Shown: positions 3,397 through 46,609 of the stretch, piece after piece
Layout: each line of letters opens with the position of its first letter
How positions within the stretch are numbered: the stretch's first letter is position 1
From: Octopus bimaculoides
Lineage: Eukaryota
DNA length: 46,609 nucleotides
Reading direction: 5' to 3'
Assembly (NCBI RefSeq): GCF_001194135.2
Contig: NC_069000.1
Coordinates: forward strand, 47,435,488 to 47,482,096
Program-made: the position numbers and the translations under genes
Notes under the pieces: model-generated
What the model was told of the DNA's origin: nothing
Databases searched by the model: none
The model's input: only the letters and a program-made list of their open reading frames with translations

Positions 3397-3759
3397 CTAC
3401 TGTGGAGTGCTAACAGCACCACCCTAGCGGGATCACTGCCAGAGCAGCGGTAGCACCATTTGAGCGCGATCATTTCCAGCTTCGCCTTACTGGCACTTGT
3501 GTTGGTGGCATGTGAACAAAACGTTGGGCTGACTCCTGTGCAGGTAGCACGTAAAAAACACCATTTGAGCATGGCCATTGCCAGTACCGCCGGACTGCCC
3601 CTCGTGCCTCTGGCATGTAAAAAGCACTCACTACACTCTCGGAGTGGTTGGCGTTAGGGAAGGGCATCCAGCTGTAGAAACTCTGCCAGATCAGATTGGA
3701 GTCTGGTGTAGCCATCTGGTTCGCCAGTCCCCAGTCAAATCGTCCAACCCATGCTAGCT
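3397..3759 (+). mobile_element. RTE-derived 3' UTR copy
   Basis: Same sequence as 21890-22290 (gcaccatttgagc...ggcacgtaaaaa units; cactacactctcggagtggttggcgttagggaagggcatccagctgtagaaactctgccagatcagattgg). Confidence 0.85.
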
Positions 3760-4446
3760 TCCTTTTTCGTACTCATAAAGCATTATGTGCCTCAAATGCT
3801 CTTTGGATACTTCCTAGTTAGAAAGGGTTTTAATCAAAGAAATTTTAATTCTATTATTCTGTAAAATAATATTTAATTAGTTTAAATGTACACAAAGGCA
3901 CAAAAATAATTTTAAATTCCATTAGACATTCTAAAATACTATTAAATTGCGCTTAATTTTANNNNNNNNNNNNNNNNNNNNNNNNNNNNNNNNNNNNNNN
4001 NNNNNNNNNNNNNNNNNNNNNNNNNNNNNNNNNNNNNNNNNNNNNNNNNNNNNNNNNNNNNNNNNNNNNNNNNNNNNNNNNNNNNNNNNNNNNNNNNNNN
4101 NNNNNNNNNNNNNNNNNNNNNNNNNNNNNNNNNNNNNNNNNNNNNNNNNNNNNNNNNNNNNNNNNNNNNNNNNNNNNNNNNNNNNNNNNNNNNNNNNNNN
4201 NNNNNNNNNNNNNNNNNNNNNNNNNNNNNNNNNNNNNNNNNNNNNNNNNNNNNNNNNNNNNNNNNNNNNNNNNNNNNNNNNNNNNNNNNNNNNNNNNNNN
4301 NNNNNNNNNNNNNNNNNNNNNNNNNNNNNNNNNNNNNNNNNNNNNNNNNNNNNNNNNNNNNNNNNNNNNNNNNNNNNNNNNNNNNNNNNNNNNNNNNNNN
4401 NNNNNNNNNNNNNNNNNNNNNNNNNNNNNNNNNNNNNNNNNNNNNN

Positions 4447-5335: not shown

Positions 5336-6834
5336 AGTTGTGACGTTCATGCCTTTCCCAAAACAATTATCTGTCGGTGAATGGAACAGTTACAAGGAAG
5401 AGCTGAAATCCAATCTTGATATCAACAACTTTTTTACTTCTTGCATATATTAATACATAACCATAGCTTATATAAAAACCAAAAGTCTTGCTTAAGGTCT
5501 CAGTGTTAAAACAGAAAGATTTCCTTTATTCTAAAAGCCATTTTTGTCTTTTAACTTTTTTTACTGTGTCAACCAGCCCAGTTTACTTAGCTGTAAGTAG
5601 GTACCACGGTGTGCACTTACTTCGCAGTACCCTATCAAGGTACTGTCTGTATAACCAAAGTACCACAACTTCACTGTAGCTATGACAGCCAGCTTGTCTG
5701 TGGCGTTGTTATGTCAGGCGTCCAATTGACTTTCTTTCATAAAATAATGTCACTCGTCACTCAATTATTTCTTCATTGGGACACCTCCTACTCCCCCCCN
5801 NNNNNNNNNNNNNNNNNNNNNNNNNNNNNNNNNNNNNNNNNNNNNNNNNNNNNNNNNNNNNNNNNNNNNNNNNNNNNNNNNNNNNNNNNNNNNNNNNNNN
5901 NNNNNNNNNNNNNNNNNNNNNNNNNNNNNNNNNNNNNNNNNNNNNNNNNNNNNNNNNNNNNNNNNNNNNNNNNNNNNNNNNNNNNNNNNNNNNNNNNNNN
6001 NNNNNNNNNNNNNNNNGGTGGGAAGAGAAGCAGGATATGGCGTCATGAGAGTGCTTCAAGAGAGGGGGGAATGAAGGGGGGAGGTGGTGGAGAGCAAAAT
6101 GCATTAAATAATAGGGGGGGAGAAGAACAGAATTAAAGAACTGTAGAGAGAAACAATTAAAAACAACAACAATAACAGCAACAAGAACAATATTTGTTTC
6201 TAATTTAGGCAGGAGGTCAGAAATTTTGAGGGGAGGGGGAGTTAGCCGATTACACTGACATGCCTCCACACACACACACACATCTGGTTCTTTGTTTTAT
6301 TGGCCCTGGAAGAATTTTATGGCTGACTCTCGATCGATTCTACTTATTTAATGCCTTGAGTACAACAACAACAACGACGACAACAAGTTGCAAGCAATAA
6401 GGATGCCGACAGTTGCTGCAATTATAAAGCTGTCAAAAATCTGTTTGTGTGTGTGTGTGTGTGTGTGTATACATCTGTCTATGTATTTATGTGTGTGTGT
6501 GTGTGTGAGAAAGTATGTACTTAGTTAAGTAGCAGAATATTTTACAGAATGAAATAGAATATAAGATAAGGTCACAGTGTTGTGTGAGTGGTGGTGGTGG
6601 TGGTGGTAGTGATGATGGTGATGATGACAATAGTGGTGGTGGAGCTCTACGTCACTTGCAAGTGGTGTTATCACCGCTCCCCCCCCCCCGATCCTCTTCT
6701 TTCTCCGTTGCAGAATGTGTTGTGAAAAGACTGTTTTGTTGGCAAGGTATTTCTGTCGAAGAAACAATGGAACTTTTGTATTAAATAGCAACAAAGGGAA
6801 GATATTTTACATGAAGGGTTAAACAGCTGTACTT

Positions 6835-17606: not shown

Positions 17607-17937
17607 GAGTGTAGTGGGTGCTTTTGCGTGCCACTGGCACGAGGGCCAGTCAGGCTGTACTGGTAATGGCCACACTCAAATGGTGCCACTTTCTTTACGT
17701 GCCACCTGCACAGGAGCCAGTCCAGCGGCACTGGCAATGACTTCGCTCAAATATTTTTTTACGTGCCACCAGCACAAGTGCCAGTAAGGTGACGCTGGTA
17801 ATGATCATGCTCGAACGGTGCTTTTTACATGCCACCGGCACAGAAGCCAGTCAGCTGCTTTGGCAACGATCACGCTTGGACGGTACTCTTAGCGCTCCAC
17901 TAGCACGGATGCCAGTCATTGAATTTGATTTCGATGA
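17607..17937 (-). mobile_element. RTE-derived 3' UTR copy abutting the Tigger fragment
   Basis: Reverse complement of the repeat-unit region of 21840-22170. Confidence 0.8.
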
Positions 17938-17964: not shown

Positions 17965-18220
17965 GTGGAAGGGCATCCAGCTGTAAAAGCCTTGCCAAAA
18001 CTGACCTCATAGCCTGTGCTTCTGCCATGTAGAAGGCACTAAGTCCACCTTGCTAAGTGGTTGGTGTTAGGAAGGGCATCCGGCTGTAAAAATCCTGCCA
18101 AAACAGTCACAGAAATCTGGTGCAGGCTTCTGCCTGGCTGCCTCTTGTGAAACCATTCCACCCATGCCAGCATGGAAGGCAGGTATTAAATGATGATGAT
18201 GATGATGATGATGATAATGA
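17965..18220 (+). mobile_element. Short elements sharing the RTE 3' terminus, with (GAT)n tail
   Basis: ggaagggcatcc(a/g)gctgtaaaa...cccatgccagcatggaa...aaatgatgatgatg. Related copies at about 14690-14790 (+), 16640-16850 (-), 29495-29650 (+) and 37390-37520 (+). Confidence 0.7.
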
Positions 18221-21531: not shown

Positions 21532-22293
21532 ATGGTCATGTGGCGAGAATGGATGAGGATAGCTGTGTGAAAAAGTGCCACACCCTAGCGGTTGAGGGTA
21601 CCTGTGGAAGAAGTAGACCCAGAAAGACCTGGGATGAAGTGGTGAAGCACAACCTTTGAACATTAGGCCTCACTGAGGCAATGACTAGTGACCGAGTCCT
21701 TTGGAAATATGCTGTGCTTGAGAAGACCCAGCAAGCCAAGTGAGACCATAACCCATGGTCTTTACCAGGGGTGTAGCCAGCCCACTTATGCGTACCTTTC
21801 CTTCATTGGACACTAAACTCTGCTTGCGAAGATCTGTTGAGGCTAGTGAAATTGAAATCAAATTCGATGACTGGCATCCGTACTAGTGGAGTGCTAAAAG
21901 CACCATCCGAGCGTGATTGTTGCCAGAGCAGCTGACTGGCTTCTGTGCCAGTGGTACGTAAAAAGCACCATTTGAATGTGATCGTTACCAGCGTCGCCTT
22001 ACTGGCATTTGTCGGTGGTACGTGAAAAAATATTTGAGCGAGGTCGTTGCTAGTGCCACTGGACTGGCTTCTATGCAAGTGGCACGAAAAAAATTCCATT
22101 TGAGAGTGGCCGTTGCTAGTAGTCTGACTGGCCCTCGGGCCGGTGGCACGTAAAAGCACCCACTACACTCTCGGAGTGGTTGGCGTTAGGAAGGGCATCC
22201 AGCTGTAGAAACTCTACCAGATCAGATTGGAGCCTGGTGCAGCCATCTGGTTTGCCAGTCCTCAGTCAAATCGTCCAACCTGTGCCAGCATGG
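21532..22293 (+). mobile_element. RTE-clade LINE 3' end (RT C-terminus plus 3' UTR with internal ~65-bp repeats)
   Basis: YGHVARMDEDSCVKKCHTLAVEGTCGRSRPRKTWDEVVKH is the RTE C-terminal GHV.RM...G.R.RGRPRKTW motif. It is followed by four ~65-bp repeats and the conserved ggaagggcatccagctgtagaaactct...tccaacc end. Confidence 0.85.
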
Positions 22294-23348
22294 TAAAAAC
22301 TGCATAGAAACCCTTCTGGTTTCAAATCTTGCTGAGGTCAACTTTGCCTTTTGCTCCTTATGGGTCAATTAAATAAAGTGCCAGTCGAGTCCTGAGTTCA
22401 GTGGAATTGACTACCCCCACACCTTCAAATTTTAGGCCATTCTACACACTTATTAAAGCATGTATGTATGTGTGTGTGTACATACACATATTTAACTGTA
22501 AAGCTACATAAGTGACTCAAGGTCAGAGAGTTTCTTGTGTTGCATTTAGCAAAGAGAGAGAGACAGACAGACAGACGGACACTGGAAATGTGAGGTTATG
22601 CCAGTATTTCATCCTGGGTCGTCGTGTTGTGATGTGGGCTGCAAGTTTATTAAAATATTAAAAATAAAAACCATCCAGTAGCAAATTGGCCTTCATGAAG
22701 ATCTCCCCACAATGATAAAGAAAAGAAAGCTAAGATGGAATGGCATTTAACAATATCCATTGGCATGCCAAGACCATGTTCGAAANNNNNNNNNNNNNNN
22801 NNNNNNNNNNNNNNNNNNNNNNNNNNNNNNNNNNNNNNNNNNNNNNNNNNNNNNNNNNNNNNNNNNNNNNNNNNNNNNNNNNNNNNNNNNNNNNNNNNNN
22901 NNNNNNNNNNNNNNNNNNNNNNNNNNNNNNNNNNNNNNNNNNNNNNNNNNNNNNNNNNNNNNACAAGGAATGGATGGCTAAATTGTTAGCAGAGATCTGA
23001 GATCTGGTACACAAAGCTGTGACTCATTGAAGTGATTTGTGTACAGTGAGGCACAGCGACACTCCTGTGACACCATCAGGAGTTGCCAGTTCAAGCAGAG
23101 GAGTGTGTGTGTGTGTGTGATGTGTCTGCAATGTGTATAAATATATACCTGTGTGTGTGTACAAATATGCACACACAATGGACTTCTCGTTGTAAGGATG
23201 AACACCTGCTTTCTTTCAGTCTTTCAAGGATATTATATTCAATGGCAGTGTGTGTGTGTGTGTGTGTGTGTAATGTGTGTATGTGTGTAGGCTTATTTCC
23301 TGTCCCATAAAGGCCAGTAGATAGTGAGTATGCAATGACTGCCATAAA

Positions 23349-23575
23349 CATCATCATCATCATCATCATCATCATCGTTTAACGTCCGCTTTCCATGCTA
23401 GTATGGGTTGGACGATTTGACTGAGGACTGGTGAAACCGGATGGCAACACCAGGCTCCAATCTAATTTGGCAGAGTTTCTACAGCTGGATGCCCTTCCTA
23501 ACGCCAACCACTCAGAGAGTGTAGTGGGTGCTTTTAAGTGTCACCCGCAGGAAAACGGCCACGCTCGAAATGGTG
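23349..23575 (-). mobile_element. RTE-derived 3' end with (ATC)n tail, truncated by gap
   Basis: catcatcatcgtttaacgtccgctttccatgctagtatgggttggacg... is the reverse complement of the family 3' end. Confidence 0.85.
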
Positions 23576-24741
23576 NNNNNNNNNNNNNNNNNNNNNNNNN
23601 NNNNNNNNNNNNNNNNNNNNNNNNNNNNNNNNNNNNNNNNNNNNNNNNNNNNNNNNNNNNNNNNNNNNNNNNNNNNNNNNNNNNNNNNNNNNNNNNNNNN
23701 NNNNNNNNNNNNNNNNNNNNNNNNNNNNNNNNNNNNNNNNNNNNNNNNNNNNNNNNNNNNNNNNNNNNNNNNNNNNNNNNNNNNNNNNNNNNNNNNNNNN
23801 NNNNNNNNNNNNNNNNNNNNNNNNNNNNNNNNNNNNNNNNNNNNNNNNNNNNNNNNNNNNNNNNNNNNNNNNNNNNNNNNNNNNNNNNNNNNNNNNNNNN
23901 NNNNNNNNNNNNNNNNNNNNNNNNNNNNNNNNNNNNNNNNNNNNNNNNNNNNNNNNNNNNNNNNNNNNNNNNNNNNNNNNNNNNNNNNNNNNNNNNNNNN
24001 NNNNNNNNNNNNNNNNNNNNNNNNNNNNNNNNNNNNNNNNNNNNNNNNNNNNNNNNNNNNNNNNNNNNNNTATATTACAAACTGACAGCCTCAACAGATT
24101 GATCAATCTGAAGCTCAGTTAAAACAGGTCCACAGTAACATCAAACTCAAAACCATACTTGCAAAAACCTATTTAACTATTCAGGTTATGTCTGCACCTT
24201 TTATTTTCTTAAAATTATTCTCAAATAGAGAAAACTTTAAAAAAGCCTTTCAAACTTATTTTTATTTCCACATCTCATCTGCTACAAACTGGAGGTCAGT
24301 TTAAAATAATCTTTAAAAACCAGTAATTTTTTAATTTAATTTTGTTTTTATTAATACTTCTCTATTAAGACCACAGGTTACTTCAGTCAACAGGGCACTG
24401 TAAACTGTTGTAACCAGGAAAAGTTTGAAGTTTTGTCAGGCTCAGCACAAATTCCTAACCAAATCCCATTATTTCATTAACTCCAACAACCATCTCATAT
24501 TTTGATAGAAATATCTTTTAACTTACGATTTGAAAATGGTGAAGAGCAGGGATTTTTTTTTTCTTCTATGGAAAATATTTTTATGAAAAGACACTATTGG
24601 ATCAATTGGAATCCTCGTTGTAAGAACCAACAGAATGCCCGTTGCATAATTCATAAGCTTCTCCATGGTCTCCCTATCTTCAGACATTTTCACGTTAAAA
24701 AAAAAATATATATTTTCTAAAAATTTTTTTTTCCTCTTCAG

Positions 24742-26057: not shown

Positions 26058-26393
26058 TATATATACATACATACATACATACATATATATATATATATAC
26101 ATACATATACATATATACATATATACACACACACATATATATATATACATACATACACACACACATATATATACATACATACACACATATATATACATAC
26201 ATACACACACATATATATACATACATACACACACATATATATACATACATACACACACANNNNNNNNNNNNNNNNNNNNNNNNNNNNNNNNNNNNNNNNN
26301 NNNNNNNNNNNNNNNNNNNNNNNNNNNNNNNNNNNNNNNNNNNNNNNNNNNNNNNNNNNNNNNNNNNNNNNNNNNNNNNNNNNNNNNNNNNNN

Positions 26394-29304: not shown

Positions 29305-30940
29305 GTATGATGACCAATTTCTTGGCAAATGGAGCACTCAATACCTCCACAACAGATATTAAAAACTTTTTAAATGCATTCTCATATTTATATTTGTTCC
29401 TATTTTGAATCTTCTGTCAGTCCATTCCATCAAAGAATTGTATAATTCCTCATGATCTGATGTAATGGTACCATGTAGAAAGCACCAGTTGACTTGTAAA
29501 GGGATTGGCAGTTGGAAGGGCTTCTGGCTGTAGAAACCATGCCAAAACAGACAACTGGGACCTGGTGCAGCTCTCTGGTCATGCCAGCTCCTGTCAAACC
29601 GTCCAACCCATGCCAGCATGGAAAATGGATGTTAAATGATGAGGATGATGTGAAATAGAATGGTAGAATGGCAATGTAGCCAGGAGAGAGTAGAGAGAAG
29701 ATGTGAAAAAAACTAGGCAGAAGTTGAATGGAAGTGAAATGGGGTGGATGGGAAGGGCATTGAAGAAGAGAAGCACATGGTACTGGAGTGATTGGGAATT
29801 GTGGGGGGAATGAAGACAGAAAGTGAGCTAACTTAAAATGAAGCATCTTGCTGAAGAAATGACCCCACAACCATCTGAGCTTCTGATAGCAATGGTAAGG
29901 TTTGAACTTAGCACCACAGAAAAACATTAACATGTGTGGGCTACATCTGCCTGGGGTACCTATTTACAGCCAGGTGGACTGGTAAAGATATGAGATCACT
30001 GAGGTGACCCTTGATTGTCTACTTCTTTACTTACCTGGCCAGCTGGAGCTTTCTGTGTGTGTTGCTAATAATTACTTGTATATCAAGCTTATCATCATCA
30101 TCATCATCATCATAATCATCTTTGCTGTATTGAGATATTTGTTAACATTCAAAATATCCCCCCTCCACCATCACCACTACCCCTGCTACTTCATGCTGAA
30201 GCACCAATTTGACATATTTTCTATAATTAGCCCTAATTAATAATCTAGAACCAGCCAGTTAATTGCCGGTGCTAATGATAATCATTGCTGGTTGTCATTT
30301 CTCTTGGAAGAAATATAAAGGAATAGGATGGGGCATGCCTGTGCACTCACTGTTATAGCCCCATGGTGGGACTGGTGTGATGACAAAAGCATCCAGTTAT
30401 AATATATATAAAGGAGTAGGATGGCGGTGGGGAGGTATGCGTGTGTGTGTTGTGTGTGTGTAATAATAGAGGTTCAAACAAATCTCACTTTCAGCTCTTC
30501 ATCAAGCGCATGGCTAACAAGAACCTATAAAAATAGAACAGAGAAGAGGAGACTGGTGAGAGAATAGATGTTTGTTCCATTCGTTTAGAACCGTTTCATA
30601 ATCTTATTAGTTATAGAGTAGATGTTACATCAACATTTACAGACATAAAATATACATATAAACATATATATGCCCGTGTACCCCCCCCCCTATGATGGAC
30701 TCTCCCGTTGTTAGACAATGTATGAGGGTTCAACAATTTCTTACCAAACAACCACACAGATCGTTTGTTTATAGGGATCAAATGTTTGTGTAGACATAAG
30801 CTCACTCCCTCCATCAGAGCAACGTGAAATGAAGTACTTTGCTCAAGAACACAATGCAATGCCTGGTCTGGGAATTGAACCCACGGTCTTGCATTTGTGT
30901 GTGCAACACCCTAACCGCTAAGCCATGCACCTGTGTACAT

Positions 30941-33701: not shown

Positions 33702-33964
33702 GAGACCCTTGTTGTGATTTCATTCAATGTTTATCAATGAGTGTCACCATCACATAAGCAATGTTCTTCATTTTCAATCTTCCATGGAAACCTGTCTGGC
33801 CATGAAGGAAATATCACAAGGGAAGGTTAGGGGACAAGAACAGCATCAGTGAATTCTGTTTGACCCATGGCAAAGTCGATATCAAAACGATGGTGAATTA
33901 TCTATTTCATTAGCTAATTATTTATTTCTTTGTCTAATTATATATTTTTTGCTTTGCTTTCTAG

Positions 33965-34160
33965 GTTAAATCAATTAAACCACAACGTGTCATCACCCAA
34001 TCATTTCAGAAAAGACAAACACCTGTACGACCACTTAAACCGTTACGACTCATCCTATGCTGTGCGATTTGACCCCAACAAGTCAAAGCAGAACTGGAAA
34101 AGATCTTATGATGATTCTGACTCCGATTCGACCTATGCCACTGTTGGCGAGAACTCGTAG
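33965..34160 (+). CDS. Receptor gene terminal coding exon: Tyr-rich tail with ITIM-consensus motif
   Basis: Acceptor tttgctttgctttctag; phase 2 completes AA|G; KLNQLNHNVSSPNHFRKDKHLYDHLNRYDSSYAVRFDPNKSKQNWKRSYDDSDSDSTYATVGENS-TAG (stop ends 34160). Confidence 0.85.
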
Positions 34161-34865: not shown

Positions 34866-36468
34866 GAAAGCCTTGCACTGCTAGAGTTGGTGCAGCTACC
34901 TCACCAAGGTCTCATGAAGGTTGTGCAGCGTCAGAGAAACTGTTATGAAGACTTCAATGGGTTTAGTGAATGTTGTCAACTTTGGCACTTCTCCCAGAAT
35001 CTTGGAACATTTTTACATTTATTTGTTTTTTGTTGGTTTTTGTTTTTCTCTCTCTCTTTAAACATTCCTTTTTAATTTCCAGAAGGCCAATGGAAGCCAA
35101 CTCCCATGATGAAGGGTTCAAACCCCAGATAGGGAACTGTATCAAACCCATTAGTTTTAATCTTTTTTTGTTATTGTTGTTGTTGTTATTATTATAATTA
35201 TTATTATTAGGGCAGTGGATTTGCAGAATCAGTGAAGCATCAGGAAAAATTCTTTGTGCTATTTTTTCCTATTCATCACATTCTGAGTTCAAAACCCACC
35301 AATATCAATTCCGCTTATCATCCTCCCAAGTGTCAATAGAGTAAGGTACCAGTCACATACTAGGGTCAGTATAATGTAATCCTAGACACACTATACCTGA
35401 AACTGCATCCTTCCAGAAGTGTGTGTGTGTAGGGGGAAAGGGGTTATTAAGATATACCAGTCATATATTGGGGAAAGGGAGAGTCAATATAATTGACCAA
35501 CAGTTCTTGGTACAATTAAAAATTGGTTTCATAAATATTCTGGTGTAGTGTTGGTTCCTTCAGCTGGAAACCAACAACACAGCCTTTAGCTGGTTGATCA
35601 AATTGCTAAAGATAGCAGCCAAACACCCTATTGTCAAAAAGAAAAAAAGAATAAGTCTGAGGATACACGGCGTTTGTGAAATGAAAGATGGGATAGTCAT
35701 AGTTGGAATGTCTTGGGAAAGGAATGACCTACAGCAAATAATCATGCAAAAGTCTTGACAGAAATGGCCAACCGAGTCGAGACCAGAACCATGTAAAAAC
35801 TTCTTACAGAAGCTGCACATCACATTCCTCTTCATCTCTACTTCTTCTTCTCTTCCTCTTTATTCTTTCATACTTCTTTTTTACCTTCTCCTCCTCCTCC
35901 TTCATCAATTACATTGCTTCTCTCTTTCTTTCTCTCTACAAAAACCATTTAACATTCAAAGACTGGTGCTGCCATCTGCCCTATCTCCATTATTTTTCTT
36001 TCTCCCTTAAAGAAAGGCATGACCACCACAACTCCTACTTGCTGCCATCATTCACATCTAATTAACAAGTAATATAATTGCCATCNNNNNNNNNNNNNNN
36101 NNNNNNNNNNNNNNNNNNNNNNNNNNNNNNNNNNNNNNNNNNNNNNNNNNNNNNNNNNNNNNNNNNNNNNNNNNNNNNNNNNNNNNNNNNNNACACCAAC
36201 CATATGTTTGTGTTCCTCATGCTGTCTGGCAAGGTGCCAGTTTCTGTAGCAATGATTGCAGTGAGGTGTTTAGTGAGTTGCAGAGATCCTAAATTATTAC
36301 TGGTACATATTTTTACTGCCTTCACCCCCAGACATTAGAAGTGAAGCAGATGTTGGTGTGATTTGAACTCAGAATCAAAAATGAAGCAGTGACCCAGATA
36401 TTGTATGAAATATTGGGGTCAGCCCATTATCATATTCATCTTGATACAATATGAAGATTAAAGGCCAC

Positions 36469-36503
<35 letters not shown>

Positions 36504-39500
36504 TATGGCTGCTGCTTTCAGAGCAAAGATGTACAAAAGAGGACTGGATCATATTGATTTCATGTCAACAGGGTCTGACTTGATCAATACAAGACAAACA
36601 GAAATGGCTGAAATGGCTTAATTCGGTTTAAGATTTGGTACGGCCAAGCCACAGTTCTTCCTTACTTTTTTTTTTCTCCTCAAAGACAGCATTTTTGGAG
36701 CAGGAGACAGGCTGATGAATGGTCTGGAGCCAAACTTCATAATTGGAAGCTTTAGCAGAGCACTGGCAATCGTTATATACACACACACACACACACATAC
36801 CTACACGTATATATGAGGTGAGGGAAAACAGTAAAAGGAATCAGTTGTTATGAAGAAGGGGGAGGAGACTTTGTTGCTGTGGAGATGTGATGCTGTCAAT
36901 GGATGATGACCATTGGATAAAGAAACAGCAAGAGATGCAAGTGGGAGGAAGGCTTGGGCAGAAGTGGTGAGGGATGGTGTCAGGAGGACAGAGCACATCA
37001 TAAAGATGAGAGAGGGAGAGCAATTTGTGGTGAGATGGGGTGTGGGAGAACACCTGTCCAACCCATATGAACAGACAGAAACAGTTTTATATAAAAATTA
37101 TGATCACACACACACACACACACACNNNNNNNNNNNNNNNNNNNNNNNNNNNNNNNNNNNNNNNNNNNNNNNNNNNNNNNNNNNNNNNNNNNNNNNNNNN
37201 NNNNNNNNNNNNNCACACACACACACACACACTCATTTACTGGTTTCAATCTTTGGGTTGTGGCTATGCTGGGGCACTGCCTGGAAGTGTCAATTATTTT
37301 ATCAGTGTCTTTTTGTCAAATCCCTAAGTTATAGTGATGTAAATGAACCAACACCAGCTGTCAAGAAACACACACACACACACCTATGCCAGTGCCACCT
37401 GACTGGCACCCGTGCCAGTGGGATATAAAAAGCATCAGGTGCAGCCTCCTGGCTTGCCAGTCCAGTCAAACCATCCAACCCATGCCAGCATAGAAAGCAG
37501 ATGCTAAATGATGATGACGATCTGTTTCTGTTTGTGGTAGAAAACCTTCCACGGCACATATGTTGTCTGGAATGGAGGAAAACAGGCAGGTTCCTTATCT
37601 TCCCCAATATTCAGTCTCAATCAACGATTTGGTCAGAGTCATCCACATCAAAGGAGAATTGTTGTTCCCAAGCTTCACAATAATAATTTCTGTTTGCTGA
37701 AGGTGTGAGAGAAGCAAACAGGAAGCTGTGACATTCATGTCCTTCCCATAAGTGATACAAATGAAGGTTGGGGGAGATAACACACTATTTGCTGTTATAA
37801 ATATTCGTTTTACTTCTTTTTTGATCCTCATCCTTCCTAAAATTCTATTATTTGTTTTCAGTATTCAAATATTTAAAATGGGTCAGAAATAAAAGACATT
37901 TCTGGTTTTTTTTCCAAAAATATATGGAGTCTTGTTTTTATTGTTGATGTTATGATTGATTTCAAGTGGGACTGGCCTTGTTTGAGGGGTTTGTGTATCT
38001 TGAGAGAGGGAGCTAATTAAGAAGGACAAAGATCAATGTGGCAGTGGTAGAAAGAAGAGAGAGAGAGAGAGGGGGGACATAGTGGAAGATGGTCACAGAT
38101 GTGGCACTGGAATGGTCTTATTTGTTACAAGTGAATCTGGCAACTATTCCAACTGTTGTCCACTCAACTAAGAAGTTGAGAGTGGTACCCAACTCATCCA
38201 GGTATTTGTCAGGGAAATTTGAGTGAACAAGATAAAAAAACTGAGAAAATAAAATCAATTTTGAATTACAAGCAAAGAATTCTTGAGATTTCTGTGTGAC
38301 TTTTTCATTTTAACACCAGAAAATATTTCAGCTTTAATTACCTGCCGAATTGACGACTTTTCACTGAGTATCTAATGACCATCTCAAACATATTAAAATA
38401 CAGATCCCATTTCGGAGACAGTGGTCCTGTTGTTGTTGTTGTTGGGTACACAAACCCCATCTACCCATAGACATCCCAGACAGCCTCCAAAAGGAAACTG
38501 TTCTACTAAGTCATAAAGATTCACTCACCAATTCTCTACAACCCCAAGTTCACAGATACACAGACTCTTTCTCACCATTTCTATAACTACTGTTGTTTTC
38601 CTAACTTAGCTGTGTAACCCAGAACGCCATCGAAGCTTATCTCATCTCTATTAAAAATAACAAAGCTTTCCTCCATCAACAATTCAGCCAGAAACACGAG
38701 AGAGAGAGAGAGAGAGAGAGAGAGCTGGAGGCAGTTTAATCCGCTTTGATGTTTCACTGGTATTTAGTCAATTGATGTGGAATATACATTAGTTCATATG
38801 TAAACGAGTTAGTTTACATAATGTATGTTAATTTGATAATTGTGAATAAATTATTGATCAAACAATAGTTTGAAAACTAAAACATTCAACATACAACAAA
38901 AATTTATTCACACACTCACATATACAGTGTACTGTTCTGTTATTGTTGGGATCAACCAAAAACGGGTGTGTGTGTGAAGAGGTAAATTTACAAGTGGATA
39001 GGAACAACACCAAAGTTATTTTGTGTTCTTTGCTACATTGGTTTCTATTAACCCATTTATTCTATCCGAAGAATTATTATTCATTAAGATAGAAGAAATA
39101 CATATAATTAAATATATATATATATATATATATATATNNNNNNNNNNNNNNNNNNNNNNNNNNNNNNNNNNNNNNNNNNNNNNNNNNNNNNNNNNNNNNN
39201 NNNNNNNNNNNNNNNNNNNNNNNNNNNNNNNNNNNNNNNNNNNNNNNNNNNNNNNNNNNNNNNNNNNNNNNNNNNNNNNNNNNNNNNNNNNNNNNNNNNN
39301 NNNNNNNNNNNNNNNNNNNNNNNNNNNNNNNNNNNNNNNNNNNNNNNNNNNNNNNNNNNNNNNNNNNNNNNNNNNNNNNNNNNNNNNNNNNNNNNNNNNN
39401 NNNNNNNNNNNNNNNNNNNNNNNNNNNNNNNNNNNNNNNNNNNNNNNNNNNNNNNNNNNNNNNNNNNNNNNNNNNNNNNNNNNNNNNNNNNNNNNNNNNN

Positions 39501-39765
39501 NNNNNNNNNNNNNNNNNNNNNNNNNNNNNNNNNNNNNNNNNNNNNNNNNNNNNNNNNNNNNNNNNNNNNNNNNNNNNNNNNNNNNNNNNNNNNNNNNNNN
39601 NNNNNNNNNNNNNNNNNNNNNNNNNNNNNNNNNNNNNNNNNNNNNNNNNNNNNNNNNNNNNNNNNNNNNNNNNNNNNNNNNNNNNNNNNNNNNNNNNNNN
39701 NNNNNNNNNNNNNNNNNNNNNNNNNNNNNNNNNNNNNNNNNNNNNNNNNNNNNNNNNNNNNNNNN

Positions 39766-41312: not shown

Positions 41313-42461
41313 CAAGGTACACACTAACAAGCCATCCTCAGTTGCGAGTGATAGCCATGGTTGTTCCCCGATTGATATAAACTAGTTTCAATCAATCTTA
41401 CTAAGTCTGCCTCAATGGATCGACTGAGCAAACCAAAGACTTTTCAACCATGACCATCCTGTCTTAATCCTGTTTAGAAGACTACATTATCCAACACTTT
41501 CTTTTCTATGATAGTAGAGAATTAGAGGAAGTTTTAGCTGTTATTTCTAGAAGGTCAAGCACAAACATTGAAGTTCTCTTGTTAGTTATTTGTTNNNNNN
41601 NNNNNNNNNNNNNNNNNNNNNNNNNNNNNNNNNNNNNNNNNNNNNNNNNNNNNNNNNNNNNNNNNNNNNNNNNNNNNNNNNNNNNNNNNNNNNNNNNNNN
41701 NNNNNNNNNNNNNNNNNNNNNNNNNNNNNNNNNNNNNNNNNNNNNNNNNNNNNNNNNNNNNNNNNNNNNNNNNNNNNNNNNNNNNNNNNNNNNNNNNNNN
41801 NNNNNNNNNNNNNNNNNNNNNNNNNNNNNNNNNNNNNNNNNNNNNNNNNNNNNNNNNNNNNNNNNNNNNNNNNNNNNNNNNNNNNNNNNNNNNNNNNNNN
41901 NNNNNNNNNNNNNNNNNNNNNNNNNNNNNNNNNNNNNNNNNNNNNNNNNNNNNNNNNNNNNNNNNNNNNNNNNNNNNNNNNNNNNNNNNNNNNNNNNNNN
42001 NNNNNNNNNNNNNNNNNNNNNNNNNNNNNNNNNNNNNNNNNNNNNNNNNNNNNNNNNNNNNNNNNNNNNNNNNNNNNNNNNNNNNNNNNNNNNNNNNNNN
42101 NNNNNNNNNNNNNNNNNNNNNNNNNNNNNNNNNNNNNNNNNNNNNNNNNNNNNNNNNNNNNNNNNNNNNNNNNNNNNNNNNNNNNNNNNNNNNNNNNNNN
42201 NNNNNNNNNNNATTTTCCCTTCTAAATTTAAACTCTCCGAAACCCCTTATTTCAAACTTTACAAGATGTTGTAAGCCTCAGGTCAGCTCTGATAGAATTG
42301 ACTTGATTAAAGACATTCCAGCCATGAACATCTCATCTGCTTTTTAGTTATTATATCTAAGATCATACCATCCAATGCTTCCTTCTGTATTTTATGACAG
42401 TTCAGAATAAAATAGATTTCATTGCTCCTTCTAGCAAGTTGTTGACCACATACAGAACTCG

Positions 42462-42770
42462 TCATCATCGTTTAACGTCCGCTTTCCATGCTAGCATGGG
42501 TTGGACGATTTGACTGGGGACTGGTGAACCAGATGGCCACACCAGGCTCCAATCTAATCTGGCAGAGTTTGTACAGCTGGATGCCCTTCCTAACGCCAAC
42601 CACCCCGACAGTGTAGTGGGTGCTTTTACGTGTCACGGGCACGAAGGCCAGTCAGGCGGTACTGGCAACGGCCACACTCAAAATGGCGTATTTTACGTGC
42701 CACCTGCACAGGGGCCAGTCCAGCGGCACTGGCAACGATCTCGCTCGAAAGTCTTTACACGTGCCAGGAA
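42462..42770 (-). mobile_element. RTE-derived 3' end, little diverged
   Basis: catcatcgtttaacgtccgctttccatgctagcatgggttggacg...ggatgcccttcctaacgccaacc plus two ~65-bp units. Confidence 0.85.
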
Positions 42771-43276
42771 GGCGGTCAAATCCACGCTTCTATATGTAAG
42801 GTCTTCTCCCCTATTTTTGATGAGGCGTCGCATTAATTCGATGTAAAAATATCTTTAATTCATTCATTTTAAACGTCAGAAAAATCGTGACTGAACAAGC
42901 TCGACAGATTTGTCTCCCTTGGTACACGCCTGTATAGGAAGGAAGATAAATCTTTTGTTTCTAAGCTATGAATGAATTTAGGGATTTCTTTATTCTGTGA
43001 ATGAATTTAAGACAAAAAAAATCCATGCATGAACTTCAGTAGATATTGGTAGATATTTTATTGAACCTGAGATGACGAAAGGGAAAAAATTTACGTTGGC
43101 AAAGGACTTAGCCTAGTTCTAGGGCGATTATGTGACTAAACTGTGTTTCCAATACTATAATAAATATAGCAACGTCTCTATGGTGGATATTGAACTGTAA
43201 TTGGTTCATCTTTCACAGAACAGAGACTGTATTAGAATTACTAGCAGAGCAGATACCACACAGAATGTAGATATTA

Positions 43277-43640: not shown

Positions 43641-43646
43641 TTTATT
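43641..43646 (-). terminator. Candidate AATAAA polyadenylation signal for FANCG
   Basis: tttatt on plus, about 250 nt downstream of the FANCG stop. Hexamer only. Confidence 0.35.
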
Positions 43647-43891: not shown

Positions 43892-46168
43892 TTAAAGTGC
43901 TTTTTCTCGTGTTCTAAGGACATTCTCCAAAATAGCAATGTCCAGTTGTAAAACAACAAACAAAGATGGTTCATCTGTGCATTTTGGTGTTGATTTCAAG
44001 GACTCCTTTTGATTCTTAAAGCTTTCAAGCTGAGTTCTTTTCGATTTTAATAGTTTATGCAAAGCTGTTTTACTACCTTTCATCTCACGATATGTTGTCC
44101 ACAAGTCAGCTCCACTCTCAAACTGTTTTAAGCAAATCAGGGTCAAGACACAGTTGAAAGAAAGCAGAAGGTCTTTTGGTGAAATCTGAAGACCCAGCCG
44201 GAAGCAATGCACAGCATCTTGGTACCGGTGCCTGCTCTGAAGTAGAACTGCAGTGTTGTTGTAGACAGCTTGAACAACAGAGAGGAATGGAGCCTGGGGA
44301 TCAGTAGCATCACCTAAAAATGGAATGGCTGAGCTATCATCATCTCCTTTTTGACATTTCTCTGAAGGTTGCTGAAGAGGTAAGACTTTACTTAACAGAT
44401 GAGGATTTTCTTGAACAGTTTGTGTTGCAAGCTGCAAAGTTTGTAAAGCATCATCCAGTTGGTCAATATGGACCAGGGAATCAGCTTTGTACAGTAAAGC
44501 AAGTAATGTGGTTGCAAGATGAGATAAAGAATTGTTAGTGCCAATGTCTTGGCCAGGAGAATTACCAAAACTTGTCATAGAACAATTCCGATCTTTGGAG
44601 AACTGGGAACTTCCCGGTAAAAAATAGTCTTCTTCTTCATCAGACCTATTCAACTGAGAAAACATCATTGAACTGGCGTGAAGATAGTCTCTAGAATTGT
44701 CACCATTCACACAAGATAATAACCAATCACAAATTATAATACATTCGTCATATTTCCCTGCTTTTAACATACAAAACGCTGCTTCCAGATGAATTTCTGT
44801 GATGCTGGGTAAAGGACAGGATAGCATATACGTCTCAGAGTGCTGAAGGAAATGGTTATCTCTGAAATAACCTAAAAGATCAAGATAATGTTCAGATGCT
44901 TCGTCTAAATAGTTCTCTTGGAGACAGCGTTTGCAAATAAGATACATGATGTAAGGTAGACGTAGGGGTGCCCCGTACATGTCTAAATACCGACTTAGTT
45001 TCAATTGATTGTCTTCACCCAAATGAACGATGTTGTATTGAATGGAAGTTGTAGAATTTAAAGCAGTAATGAGATACTTCAAAGTGTCTAGCTCCGCCTG
45101 AACGTGTTTCTGTTGTTGATAGACAACGGCAATGTTGTATAAAGGAACAAGAAAAGAAAAGTCGAGTTTTAAAGCTGCTTGAAAATTTTCTACGGCACTC
45201 CAACAATTGCCTAATTTGAAATAACAACAGGCCTTCAGATTGAGGAATAATACGGACTGTGCGTCGGTGTAGTAGGTCGTGTCTTCCTCCTGGAAAAGTT
45301 GCAGGACTGCTTCAAACATATTCTTTATATAAAGGGAATGAGCCTTAATATAAATAACATATGACTTATATGGGTTCTGGGAGAGAGAAACATCAGGTCT
45401 GAAATGAGTTTCGGTAAGAGGAAGAGTAGAATCGAACGTTTTGAAAACGACAGCCAGTTCTTGTATGAGAAGGTGAGAATTTTTCAATTTTTCTTCAAAG
45501 CCAACAAGAACTGGAGTAGCAAAACATATTTTCCAATCAGATTCATTTATTGATTCCTCTATTCGAAATCTATGGCAAATATCAACAATCATTTGTTGGT
45601 CTGTGCAAACAGCAAGACAATAACACAAGAAAAAAACTGGTTGGAAACAAAACCAAGGAAAATCAGAATTTGACTTACATGGTTTCCTAGTCTTGGATTT
45701 TCTAGACACCGCTTCACCAGAACCGACTTTGTTCTTATAATGAAGAATTCTTTGTAAAGTGATTTCGAAATGAGATTTTTGAGTTTGCAGAGAAATTCCA
45801 GACACGTCGCTGGTGGCAGCCAATTGTCGTGCTGTATGGAAGAATAACAAGTTATAGAGAACAACACACTCAAGAATTAACTTCTCACATTGTTTGGCGT
45901 CGTCATAAACACAAGAATTACTGCGAATCTTCATCAAAAACTTCTCAAAACTTTCCCAAATTTCCGCTGAATTTGCTCCGTGTTCTTCATATTCGTTCCT
46001 CACCGCCCGAAACAGAAAAACATTATTGTCTCTCACCCATTCGGAGATATCAAATGTCTGGAATTGTAATACATCTAATGCTTCTATTGCTTTAATATAT
46101 TTACCAGAGAGAAATTCTTTAACAGCTGAATGAATCGCAGACGAGACGGAACGGTCAGACGAAGACAT
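43892..46168 (-). CDS. FANCG: Fanconi anemia group G protein homologue (TPR-repeat scaffold of the FA core complex), single uninterrupted ORF, 758 aa
   Basis: Only long ORF in the window, good start context (aaacaATG). Colinear motifs match human FANCG as recalled: [11 protein letters not shown] ~ [53 protein letters not shown] ~ [62 protein letters not shown] ~ [52 protein letters not shown] ~ [32 protein letters not shown]. Further TPR-like repeats near the C-terminus. Alignment by eye, no database search. Confidence 0.9.
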   Translation of the reverse strand: [758 protein letters not shown]

Positions 46169-46175
46169 TGTTTGA

Positions 46176-46183
46176 GCGGGAAA
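46176..46183 (-). promoter_or_regulatory. E2F consensus site (TTTCCCGC) just upstream of the FANCG start codon
   Basis: Plus strand gcgggaaa reads TTTCCCGC on minus, an exact match to TTTSSCGC, 8 nt before the ATG in a CpG-enriched stretch. Function is inferred. Confidence 0.5.
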
Positions 46184-46609
46184 TAGAGTTACTTCCCTTA
46201 TATCGTAATTTTAACGTGTGCGCGCGCGCGTGTGTGTATTATGTCAAGTTAAATATAAGATGAATCTAAAAAGGTTTTCACATCTACTTTATGTTTTCCG
46301 GACGAGGCTGCTCTGGTACAGTTTTCTCCAGCCATATACCTCACCTGAATACATACACATACACACATTCGTAGGCATCATCATAATCGAGTTGATAGCA
46401 GTTAAAACCGCTTTTCGTACGTTAAACGATGATGATGATGATATACATACATGCATATATATATATATATAAATGAAGAGCATATGCTCCAAATGCCATA
46501 GAGGTTTCCATTCTTCTTGAGCGCTAATACACCTACTTGTTCCTTCACTTGTCTTCATCTTTTTGTTTCTGTAAATTTGAACTATATATATATATATATA
46601 TATATATAT

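What the first reader, a model, noticed from the sequence alone, without database searches (positions are those of the whole stretch)
43892..46168. Full-length but intronless FANCG in an invertebrate: retroposed or intron-stripped Fanconi core gene
Seen: a 2277-nt uninterrupted ORF whose motifs are colinear with human FANCG from N-terminus to the C-terminal TPRs, in a genome where the neighbouring gene has kb-long introns. Known: human FANCG has 14 exons, and most FA core-complex subunits including FANCG are missing from Drosophila and C. elegans. Inference: this lineage retains FA core components, and this copy probably arose by retroposition or wholesale intron loss. No poly(A) remnant or TSD is visible, so the event is old, and the intact frame suggests it is the functional copy.
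Basis: partly seen in the sequence, partly recalled or inferred. Interest (0 to 1): 0.7.

Follow-up and report, generated by a model that had tools for sequence, protein, structure and literature searches.

The report
Intronless FANCG gene shared by cephalopods
The ORF is the octopus version of the DNA-repair gene FANCG, and in the cephalopod lineage sampled here its coding sequence has lost all 13-14 introns that scallop, snail and ribbon-worm copies keep at shared positions; it is a clean but fairly ordinary case of a gene rebuilt from its own spliced mRNA.

Summary
Window 43892-46168 (minus strand) is one 758-codon ORF in Octopus bimaculoides, annotated by NCBI only as 'uncharacterized protein LOC106879875'.

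**Identity.** It is a FANCG orthologue. Human FANCG is its best match among solved structures. A cephalopod-only profile aligns colinearly with a vertebrate-only FANCG profile (99.8% probability). The AlphaFold model's top three fold matches are FANCG chains. Its database relatives are named FANCG in scallop, mussel, sea star, coral, skate, fish and frog.

**Intron loss is derived.** Scallop, a gastropod and a nemertean have 13-14 coding introns, with 8-12 shared in position and phase. The octopus ORF has none.

**The event is old.** The same uninterrupted ORF occurs in two other octopods and in two sequences only 34% identical. One of those sits at the same locus, head-to-head with an NSMAF-like gene.

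**The gene is functional.** dN/dS is 0.29-0.38, and an E2F-like element lies 13-20 nt upstream of the ATG in all five loci.

**Unresolved.** I could not separate retroposition with loss of the parent gene (favoured, about 0.5) from in-situ cDNA conversion. There is no poly(A) remnant or target-site duplication, and synteny is uninformative.

FANCG is common in invertebrates, so its presence here is not novel. The interest is modest.

The parts
43892..46168 (-). FANCG coding sequence: one uninterrupted exon of 758 codons plus TAA
   Evidence: ORF listing. It translates exactly to the 758-aa product on record for O. bimaculoides GCA_001194135.2. FANCG identity. Ancestral intron positions map to about residues 58, 83, 141, 174, 209-215, 276, 320, 369, 420, 443-445, 580, 612-614, 665 and 715, and the ORF is continuous at all of them.
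45832..46104 (-). In-frame 273-nt segment (codons 22-112) removed in NCBI isoform X2. It is bounded by G|GTAAAT and ...ttcttccatacAG|, but it is conserved coding sequence and not a conserved intron.
   Evidence: P0001 lacks residues 22-112. Splice-like sites were read. The AG acceptor is specific to O. bimaculoides; O. sinensis and the third octopod read ACAA. dN/dS of the segment is 0.14-0.22 among octopods. The segment is conserved in the 34%-identical homologues.
46176..46183 (-). E2F-like element TTTCCCGC, 8-15 nt upstream of the ATG
   Evidence: It is the only TTTSSCGC match in the window. One match is what chance predicts, so the count alone is not evidence. The core TTCCCGC is invariant at -13 to -20 in all five intronless loci, although the rest of the flanks of the distant pair are unalignable. 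Human FA genes, including FANCG, are reported as E2F/DREAM targets (PMC3149625, PMC5729532). Binding was not tested.
46186..46199 (-). Conserved promoter-proximal block AAGGGAAGTAACTC
   Evidence: Conserved as AAGG[G/A]A[A/G][G/A]T[A/C]ACTC in all five intronless loci. Its function is inferred only.
43641..43646 (-). Candidate polyadenylation signal AATAAA, about 250 nt downstream of the stop codon
   Evidence: Read. The same 'aaattaataaa' context is present in the third octopod's contig L003. This is an inference with no transcript evidence.

Best explanation
**What it is.** The ORF is the single-copy cephalopod orthologue of FANCG, the TPR-solenoid subunit that pairs with FANCA in the Fanconi anaemia core ubiquitin-ligase complex.

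**What happened.** Its coding region is a processed, cDNA-derived version of an ancestral gene with about 14-15 coding exons. All 13-14 coding introns were removed together, through reverse transcription of a spliced mRNA. This happened in the cephalopod lineage before octopods split from the lineage of the two 34%-identical sequences. I infer those are decapodiforms, but their source organisms are not identified.

**Most likely route (about 0.5).** A retrocopy inserted a few kb from the 5' end of an NSMAF-like (PH_FAN/BEACH/WD40) gene, in head-to-head orientation. It became transcribed from a compact promoter with an E2F-like site just upstream of the ATG. The multi-exon parent gene was then lost. 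This is retrogene replacement, as described for amphioxus SYCP1.

**Current state.** The gene is functional and under purifying selection.

**Shown here:** FANCG orthology; the derived and complete absence of ancestral introns; sharing across deep cephalopod lineages at one locus; selective constraint.

**Inferred:** the reverse-transcriptase step; relocation as opposed to in-situ conversion; loss of the parent; E2F regulation; a role in the core complex.
For: **FANCG identity.**
- Human FANCG is the top solved-structure match for the single sequence (E 9.3e-14) and for the cephalopod profile (E 1e-14).
- hhalign of cephalopod-only against vertebrate-only profiles gives 99.8% probability, E 1.7e-29, over 556 colinear columns.
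- The AF2 model has pLDDT 73. Its top three Foldseek PDB matches are FANCG chains, with E from 1.6e-11 to 1.6e-9.
- An exhaustive HMM search found 226 relatives. The named ones are FANCG or FANCG-like in Argopecten, Mytilus, Patiria, Anneissia, Glandiceps, Montipora, skates, a teleost and Spea.
- The NJ tree follows the species tree.

**Introns are ancestral.**
- Exact exon maps give 13 coding introns in Argopecten and 14 each in Gigantopelta and Lineus.
- The phase series is 0,1,1,1,0,1,0,0,2,x,2,1,(1),2.
- 8 positions are identical in alignment column and phase in all three species, and 12 are shared between the two molluscs.

**The intronless form is shared.**
- O. bimaculoides.
- O. sinensis, apart from a 1-bp gap.
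- A third octopod on a genomic contig.
- A 180-kb ENA contig and a Logan contig.
- These form a clade with 100% bootstrap support.

**Same locus.** NSMAF-like exon 1 (MAFLESCNANERE plus a GT donor) lies head-to-head 2.5, 6.1 and 5.85 kb upstream in L008, L002 and L001.

**Function.** dN/dS is 0.38, 0.31, 0.34 and 0.29 in four pairwise comparisons. A promoter block is conserved in all five loci.

**Relocation (weak support).** The neighbours in scallop (NADPH-oxidase-like and LSM), gastropod (insulin-like and CLIC-like) and nemertean (DUF7153 and HLH) are not NSMAF-like. None of them is found in 46 kb downstream or 10 kb upstream of the octopus gene.

**No second copy seen.** No second cephalopod-labelled FANCG appeared among the named hits.

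**Precedent.** Amphioxus SYCP1 (PMC5803294).
Against: - No poly(A) remnant follows the 3' end, and no target-site duplication brackets the gene. The classic retrocopy hallmarks are therefore absent. This is expected after hundreds of millions of years, but it means retroposition is not demonstrated.
- Microsynteny around FANCG is not conserved even among scallop, gastropod and nemertean. The different neighbourhood in cephalopods therefore hardly discriminates between the routes.
- Cephalopod genomes are known to be heavily rearranged (general knowledge).
- The NSMAF-like exon 1 is 2.5-6 kb away, which is too far for a tight bidirectional promoter.
- Absence of a parental copy was judged only from protein databases. 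No whole-genome DNA search was done.
- The organisms behind the two distant sequences are unidentified.
- There is no transcript evidence for the transcription start site, or for or against 5'-UTR introns.
Confidence: 0.5

Rival explanations
1. In-situ wholesale intron loss. A full-length FANCG cDNA recombined with the ancestral locus (reverse-transcriptase-mediated gene conversion) and erased all coding introns without moving the gene. The NSMAF-like neighbour was acquired or retained through ordinary rearrangement.
For: Everything that shows derived, complete and simultaneous intron absence fits this route equally well. It also explains the absence of a poly(A) tail or target-site duplication directly. 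The promoter-proximal E2F-like site echoes an E2F consensus site at -97 in scallop FANCG, which would fit retention of the original promoter. No second locus is needed, which matches the single copy seen.
Against: No ancestral neighbour is shared with any outgroup, though the outgroups share none with each other either. As general knowledge, cDNA-mediated loss in animals usually removes runs of adjacent, 3'-biased introns rather than every intron including the first. Deleting introns that span tens of kb (32-33 kb in the outgroups) in a single conversion event is demanding.
Confidence: 0.33
2. Stepwise loss. The 13-14 introns were deleted one by one, or in small groups, over a long period on the cephalopod stem lineage.
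For: The stem branch is long: 34% identity between the two cephalopod groups and about 22% identity to bivalves. No intermediate taxa such as Nautilus were available for testing.
Against: All sampled members have zero coding introns. The flanking genes, and these genomes generally, keep their introns. Fourteen independent and exact deletions confined to one gene is unparsimonious compared with a single cDNA-based event.
Confidence: 0.08
3. The ORF is an expressed or silent retrocopy that is not the working FANCG. A functional multi-exon FANCG exists elsewhere in cephalopod genomes.
For: No whole-genome DNA search could be run. Protein databases can miss badly annotated genes.
Against: The frame is intact in five lineages across very deep divergence. 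dN/dS is 0.29-0.38, falling to 0.14-0.22 in the N-terminal segment among octopods. A promoter block is conserved. The exhaustive HMM search gave no second cephalopod-like cluster between the cephalopod hits (E 1e-274 or better) and Solemya (1e-59).
Confidence: 0.03
4. Either it is not FANCG but another TPR family, or the intronless state is ancestral and the introns were gained in other lineages.
For: Pfam and NCBIfam report only generic TPR models.
Against: The local Pfam copy has no FANCG-specific model. Bona fide frog and scallop FANCG also hit only generic TPRs. FANCG beats every other TPR protein by sequence, profile and fold. Eight intron positions and phases are identical between molluscs and a nemertean. 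As general knowledge, human FANCG has 14 exons.
Confidence: 0.01

Closest known systems
FANCG / XRCC9 (Fanconi anaemia group G protein; human structure 7KZP chain G; InterPro IPR039684)
   Same: The helical TPR-solenoid architecture is colinear over the full length. The most conserved core is octopus residues 313-487 against human 272-443. Length is similar (758 against 622-680 aa in vertebrates and 690-784 aa in other invertebrates). It appears to be a single-copy orthologue whose tree follows the species tree.
   Different: It is only about 17-20% identical to vertebrate FANCG. It has longer disordered inserts (model pLDDT below 50 at residues 150-262 and 491-541). The coding sequence is uninterrupted, against 14 exons in human (general knowledge) and 14-15 coding exons in scallop, gastropod and nemertean. 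It is not annotated as FANCG in either Octopus RefSeq set.
Retrogene replacement, e.g. amphioxus SYCP1 (Garstang and Ferrier 2018, PMC5803294); 'orphan retrogenes'
   Same: A conserved, normally multi-exon gene involved in genome maintenance is present as a single coding exon throughout a clade. No parental copy has been detected. It sits head-to-head with an unrelated gene.
   Different: For SYCP1, relocation next to the ParaHox cluster, the shared bidirectional promoter and the de novo 5' UTR were demonstrated experimentally. Here relocation is unproven, the neighbour's first exon is 2.5-6 kb away, and there are no transcript data.
Reverse-transcriptase-mediated intron loss by cDNA gene conversion
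   Same: Introns are removed exactly with the reading frame preserved, and no poly(A) or target-site duplication is present.
   Different: Documented cases usually remove a few adjacent introns. Here every coding intron, including the first, is gone.

Membership tests
FANCG (Fanconi anaemia group G protein) | Significant full-length, colinear sequence similarity to established FANCG, better than to any other TPR protein | tested here: met
   phmmer against PDB: 7kzp_G E 9.3e-14, next hit 5e-8. Cephalopod-only against vertebrate-only profiles: 99.8% probability, E 1.7e-29, residues 41-695 against 12-596.
FANCG (Fanconi anaemia group G protein) | Orthology: the nearest relatives across animals are FANCG and the gene tree follows the species tree | tested here: met
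   Named relatives are FANCG or FANCG-like in bivalves, echinoderms, hemichordates, corals, skates, a teleost and a frog. NJ tree: cephalopod clade at 100% bootstrap, grouped with the other lophotrochozoan sequences (that deeper grouping is poorly supported); vertebrates at 100%.
FANCG (Fanconi anaemia group G protein) | All-helical TPR solenoid fold matching solved FANCG | tested here: met
   AF2 model with pLDDT 73 and pTM 0.62. The Foldseek top three are FANCG chains (9a0j_G, 7kzp_G, 7kzp_H). TM-scores are only 0.32-0.47, as expected for a flexible solenoid.
FANCG (Fanconi anaemia group G protein) | Match to the family-specific model (Pfam FANCG_N PF28330 / InterPro IPR039684) | not testable with these tools
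   PF28330 is listed as a precomputed hit for scallop FANCG, but the model is absent from the local Pfam copy. Scallop and frog FANCG also give only generic TPR hits there.
FANCG (Fanconi anaemia group G protein) | Binds FANCA/FAAP20 and is needed for FANCD2-FANCI monoubiquitination by the core complex | not testable with these tools
   This is a biochemical property.
Retrogene / retrogene replacement | Lacks all introns that the parental gene type carries | tested here: met
   0 of 13-14 conserved coding introns.
Retrogene / retrogene replacement | Poly(A) tract at the 3' end and flanking target-site duplications | tested here: not met
   There is no A-run after the ORF or after the AATAAA signal. 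Only short, imperfect, chance-level direct repeats were found. These marks decay with age, so their absence weakens the claim without excluding it.
Retrogene / retrogene replacement | Located away from the parental locus (synteny broken) | tested here: inconclusive
   The cephalopod neighbours (an NSMAF-like gene and a 371-aa gene of unknown family) differ from the scallop, gastropod and nemertean neighbours. Those three also share none with each other.
Retrogene / retrogene replacement | Multi-exon parental copy absent from the genome | tested here: inconclusive
   No second cephalopod-like FANCG cluster was found in an exhaustive protein search. No whole-genome DNA search was possible.

The most novel reading that the evidence does not exclude
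FANCG was replaced by a retrocopy in a stem cephalopod. The copy was transcriptionally self-sufficient because the E2F-type element, now 13-20 nt upstream of the ATG, travelled inside the 5' UTR of the retroposed mRNA. In O. bimaculoides the once-intronless exon is now re-acquiring an intron by intronization: a single A-to-G change (ACAA to ACAG) created an acceptor, giving the in-frame 273-nt 'exitron' of isoform X2.
Probability: 0.12. Interest if true: 0.5.

Novelty: new member of a known kind. Interest (0 to 1): 0.3.

Why it matters
The practical gain is annotation. LOC106879875 in O. bimaculoides and LOC115221305 in O. sinensis can be named FANCG. The 758-aa single-exon product should be treated as the conserved form, not the 667/669-aa models.

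In evolutionary terms, this is a well-controlled example of complete, lineage-wide intron erasure in an essential genome-maintenance gene inside an intron-rich genome. It has exact ancestral intron maps for comparison. That makes it a useful marker for dating reverse-transcriptase-driven gene remodelling on the cephalopod stem, and a compact 2.3-kb target for FA-pathway genetics in cephalopod model species.

It does not change what is known about the FA pathway, because FANCG is widespread in non-ecdysozoan animals.

Tried and rejected
- **Pfam and NCBIfam scans** gave only generic TPR hits. A control showed that the local Pfam copy lacks a FANCG model, so this says nothing about membership.
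- **First AlphaFold run**, on a 3-sequence alignment, was unusable (pLDDT 39.8). I repeated it with 45 sequences.
- **The search for homologous proteins with a 21-sequence alignment** returned only the cephalopod set plus two generic TPR proteins.
- **The same search with P0004** returned no named relatives. The organisms behind ERZ21867824 and ERR12370320 therefore remain unidentified. A literature search for the accessions found nothing.
- **Isoform X2 (P0001)** is not on record as a gene product. The 758-aa form is.
- **The X2 'intron' as a retained ancestral intron: rejected.** It coincides with no ancestral intron pair. Its acceptor exists only in O. bimaculoides. The O. sinensis model needs a GT..AA junction and coincides with a 1-bp gap in a homopolymer. 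The segment has the lowest dN/dS in the gene among octopods.
- **Synteny tests** with 2-10 kb outgroup flanks and introns against 46 kb plus 10 kb of octopus flank found nothing shared.
- **Target-site duplication and poly(A) search** was negative.
- **tRNA and Rfam scans** of the window found nothing.
- **Literature searches** for FANCG with 'mollusc', 'intronless' or 'cephalopod' found no relevant report.
Full report
**1. Observation**

Window 43892..46168 holds a 758-codon ATG-to-TAA ORF on the minus strand. At the window's base composition, the chance that 758 codons stay open is about 2e-22. Every other long 'ORF' in the window is low-complexity sequence or runs through N gaps. The window comes from Octopus bimaculoides. 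The ORF translates exactly to a 758-aa product on record for assembly GCA_001194135.2. A 667-aa 'uncharacterized protein LOC106879875 isoform X2' is 100% identical over 86% of it.

**2. Identity**

Pfam and NCBIfam see only generic TPR repeats. This is uninformative, because the local Pfam copy has no FANCG model: frog and scallop FANCG also hit only generic TPRs.

Direct comparisons are decisive:
- Human FANCG (7kzp_G) is the best solved-structure match for the single sequence (E 9.3e-14, residues 313-487 against 272-443). It is also the best match for a three-sequence cephalopod profile (E 1e-14).
- A cephalopod-only profile aligns with a vertebrate-only FANCG profile at 99.8% probability (E 1.7e-29). 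The alignment covers 556 colinear columns, octopus 41-695 against vertebrate 12-596.
- An AlphaFold2 model built on 45 homologues (pLDDT 73, pTM 0.62) has FANCG chains from Fanconi anaemia core-complex structures as its top three Foldseek matches (E from 1.6e-11 to 1.6e-9, TM 0.32-0.47). These rank ahead of Ctr9, Ski3, TTC7B, OGT and the other TPR solenoids.
- An exhaustive HMM search of 1.84 billion representatives found 226 relatives. The named ones are FANCG or FANCG-like in Argopecten, Mytilus, Patiria, Anneissia, Glandiceps, Montipora, skates, a teleost and Spea. Unnamed orthologues occur in oysters, clams, a gastropod, nemerteans, an annelid, echinoderms, amphioxus and corals.
- A neighbour-joining tree follows the species phylogeny.

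FANCG is therefore widespread in non-ecdysozoan animals. Its presence in octopus is expected, although both Octopus RefSeq sets leave it unnamed.

**3. Is the intronless state derived?**

I mapped three annotated orthologues exactly onto their genomic loci, requiring GT-AG junctions that reproduce the protein.

| Species | Coding introns | CDS span |
|---|---|---|
| Argopecten irradians (bivalve) | 13 | 44.6 kb |
| Gigantopelta aegis (gastropod) | 14 | 56.8 kb |
| Lineus longissimus (nemertean) | 14 | 6.2 kb |

- The phase series are almost identical: 0,1,1,1,0,1,0,0,2,x,2,1,(1),2.
- Eight introns fall in the same alignment column with the same phase in all three species. In octopus residues these are about 83, 276, 320, 369, 420, 580, 665 and 715.
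- Twelve positions are shared by the two molluscs.
- From general knowledge, human FANCG has 14 exons.

The octopus ORF is continuous across every one of these positions. The intronless state is derived.

**4. Age and distribution**

The same uninterrupted ORF is present in these loci:
- O. sinensis (L002).
- A third octopod (Logan SRR11869390). This is a genomic contig that ends in the same microsatellites that flank the gene in the window.
- A 180-kb ENA contig (ERZ21867824). Its product is 756 aa and 34% identical, and the gene span is exactly 2271 nt.
- A Logan contig (ERR12370320). Its product is 748 aa and 68% identical to the ENA protein.

These sequences form a clade with 100% bootstrap support. 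I infer that the two distant ones are decapodiform cephalopods, but I could not identify the source organisms.

The locus is also shared. Exon 1 of an NSMAF-like gene (PH_FAN/BEACH/WD40) encodes MAFLESCNANERE and is followed by a GT donor. It lies head-to-head 2.5 kb upstream of FANCG in O. bimaculoides, 6.1 kb upstream in O. sinensis and 5.85 kb upstream in the ENA contig. The intronless gene was therefore already at this locus in the common ancestor of these lineages.

**5. Function**

Pairwise dN/dS is 0.38, 0.31 and 0.34 among the three octopods and 0.29 between the two distant sequences. This indicates purifying selection at a level plausible for a fast-evolving scaffold protein.

A short block just upstream of the ATG (AAGGGA-GT-ACTC ... 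TTCCCGC ... AAAC) is conserved in all five loci, although the remaining flanks of the distant pair cannot be aligned. Its core matches the E2F consensus TTTSSCGC (window 46176-46183). That is the only match in the window, but a single match is what chance predicts, so the evidence lies in the positional conservation. Human FA genes, including FANCG, are reported as E2F/DREAM targets (PMC3149625, PMC5729532). Scallop FANCG has a consensus E2F site at -97. E2F regulation of the cephalopod gene is an inference.

**6. The annotated internal 'intron'**

Isoform X2 removes 273 nt (45832-46104, codons 22-112) between a good donor (G|GTAAAT) and a good acceptor (ttcttccatacAG|). I reject this as a conserved intron for four reasons:
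- The acceptor AG exists only in O. bimaculoides. O. sinensis and the third octopod read ACAA.
- The 669-aa O. sinensis model needs a GT..AA junction, and it coincides with a 1-bp gap in an A-run that breaks the frame. This is most simply an assembly error that the gene model skipped.
- The segment is conserved in the 34%-identical proteins (QFQTFD..EWVRDNN, ECVVLYN).
- Among octopods it has the lowest dN/dS in the gene, 0.14-0.22.

At most it is a species-specific exitron.

**7. Mechanism**

Exact removal of all 13-14 introns from one gene, while both neighbouring genes keep theirs, points to a single event based on spliced mRNA and reverse transcription. Two routes fit.

- **Retroposition followed by loss of the parent (retrogene replacement).** The precedent is amphioxus SYCP1 (PMC5803294).
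  - It is slightly favoured because every intron, including the first, is gone.
  - None of the neighbours seen in scallop (NADPH-oxidase-like and LSM), gastropod (insulin-like and CLIC-like) or nemertean (DUF7153 and HLH) appears near the cephalopod gene, and no outgroup has NSMAF next to FANCG.
- **In-situ conversion by a full-length cDNA.**
  - It fits the absence of any poly(A) remnant or target-site duplication.
  - It also fits the single copy seen.

The outgroups share no neighbours with each other either, so the synteny argument is weak. I put retrogene replacement at about 0.5, in-situ conversion at about 0.33, stepwise loss at about 0.08 and the remaining alternatives at a few per cent. 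The broader statement (a FANCG orthologue, secondarily and completely intronless in its coding region, old and functional) I hold at about 0.9.

**8. Not done**

- I could not search the octopus genome for a parental remnant.
- No transcript data were available to fix the transcription start site, the UTR structure or the use of the X2 junction.
- No Nautilus or named squid sequence was available.

**9. Verdict**

The result is a new member of known kinds: the FANCG family, and a processed or retro-replaced gene. It is useful for annotation and as a dated example of cDNA-mediated gene remodelling in cephalopods, but it would not surprise a specialist.

Noticed in passing
L002:10185-10195 (O. 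sinensis GCA_006345805.1), equivalent to about window 45975-45985: A single-base deletion in an A-run (GCAAATTC becomes GC-AATTC) breaks the FANCG frame in the O. sinensis assembly. The NCBI model (669 aa) bypasses it with a 272-nt GT..AA 'intron'. This is probably an assembly error and an annotation artefact.
   Followed up: partly
window 42441-42840; other copies at 3522-3758, 17608-17876, 18057-18202, 22016-22296, 23366-23553, 29505-29648 and 37438-37538: An interspersed repeat of about 300-400 nt, SINE-like, with an internal 67-nt duplication at 42624-42750. It has at least 8 copies in the window at 71-92% identity, and copies also occur in the O. sinensis locus. ARAGORN and Rfam find no tRNA or RNA family in it.
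   Followed up: partly
L008:7441-7478 (-), about 2.5 kb beyond the right end of the window; also L002:3900-3937 and L001:4115-4152: Exon 1 of an NSMAF/FAN-like gene (PH_FAN, BEACH and WD40 domains) lies head-to-head with FANCG. It is conserved in sequence, orientation and approximate distance across deeply diverged cephalopod lineages. A second conserved non-coding block (GCAGGGAACCGGATAT) lies just upstream of it.
   Followed up: partly
window 33930-34160 (+): The last coding exon of the downstream, convergent neighbour gene ends at 34160 (...DPNKSKQNWKRSYDDSDSDSTYATVGENS*). The annotated product is 371 aa with no Pfam hit, and its earlier exons lie further left in the window. I did not identify it.
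   Followed up: no
window 3962-4446, 5800-6016, 22786-22962, 23576-24070, 26260-26393, 36086-36192, 37126-37213, 39138-39765, 41595-42211 and four runs of 10-33 nt: There are thirteen assembly gaps (N runs), and those whose edges show in the ORF listing abut (TA)n or (CA)n microsatellites. The low-GC bins in the composition profile are these gaps, not real AT-rich DNA.
   Followed up: yes
window 46210-46240 (-); L002 and L003 at equivalent positions: A (CA)n(CG)n microsatellite lies immediately upstream of the conserved promoter block. It is present in all three octopods but not in the two distant species.
   Followed up: no
L010:9149-9622 (-) and L010:10001 (Argopecten); L011:9990-10000 (Gigantopelta): Scallop FANCG starts 379 bp from a divergently oriented LSM-domain gene of 157 aa, a likely bidirectional promoter, with a GCGGGAAA E2F consensus at -97. 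The gastropod start codon is preceded directly by a splice acceptor, so that gene also has a 5'-UTR intron. Both genes contain one intron of about 32-33 kb.
   Followed up: partly
P0016 (Logan, 753 aa on a 2697-nt contig) and P0026 (ENA, 748 aa on contigs of 2.7-3.6 kb): Two further full-length FANCG homologues from unidentified organisms sit on contigs barely longer than the ORF. They are either transcripts or additional independent intronless genes. P0016 groups loosely with annelids and nemerteans, and P0026 with ambulacrarians.
   Followed up: no
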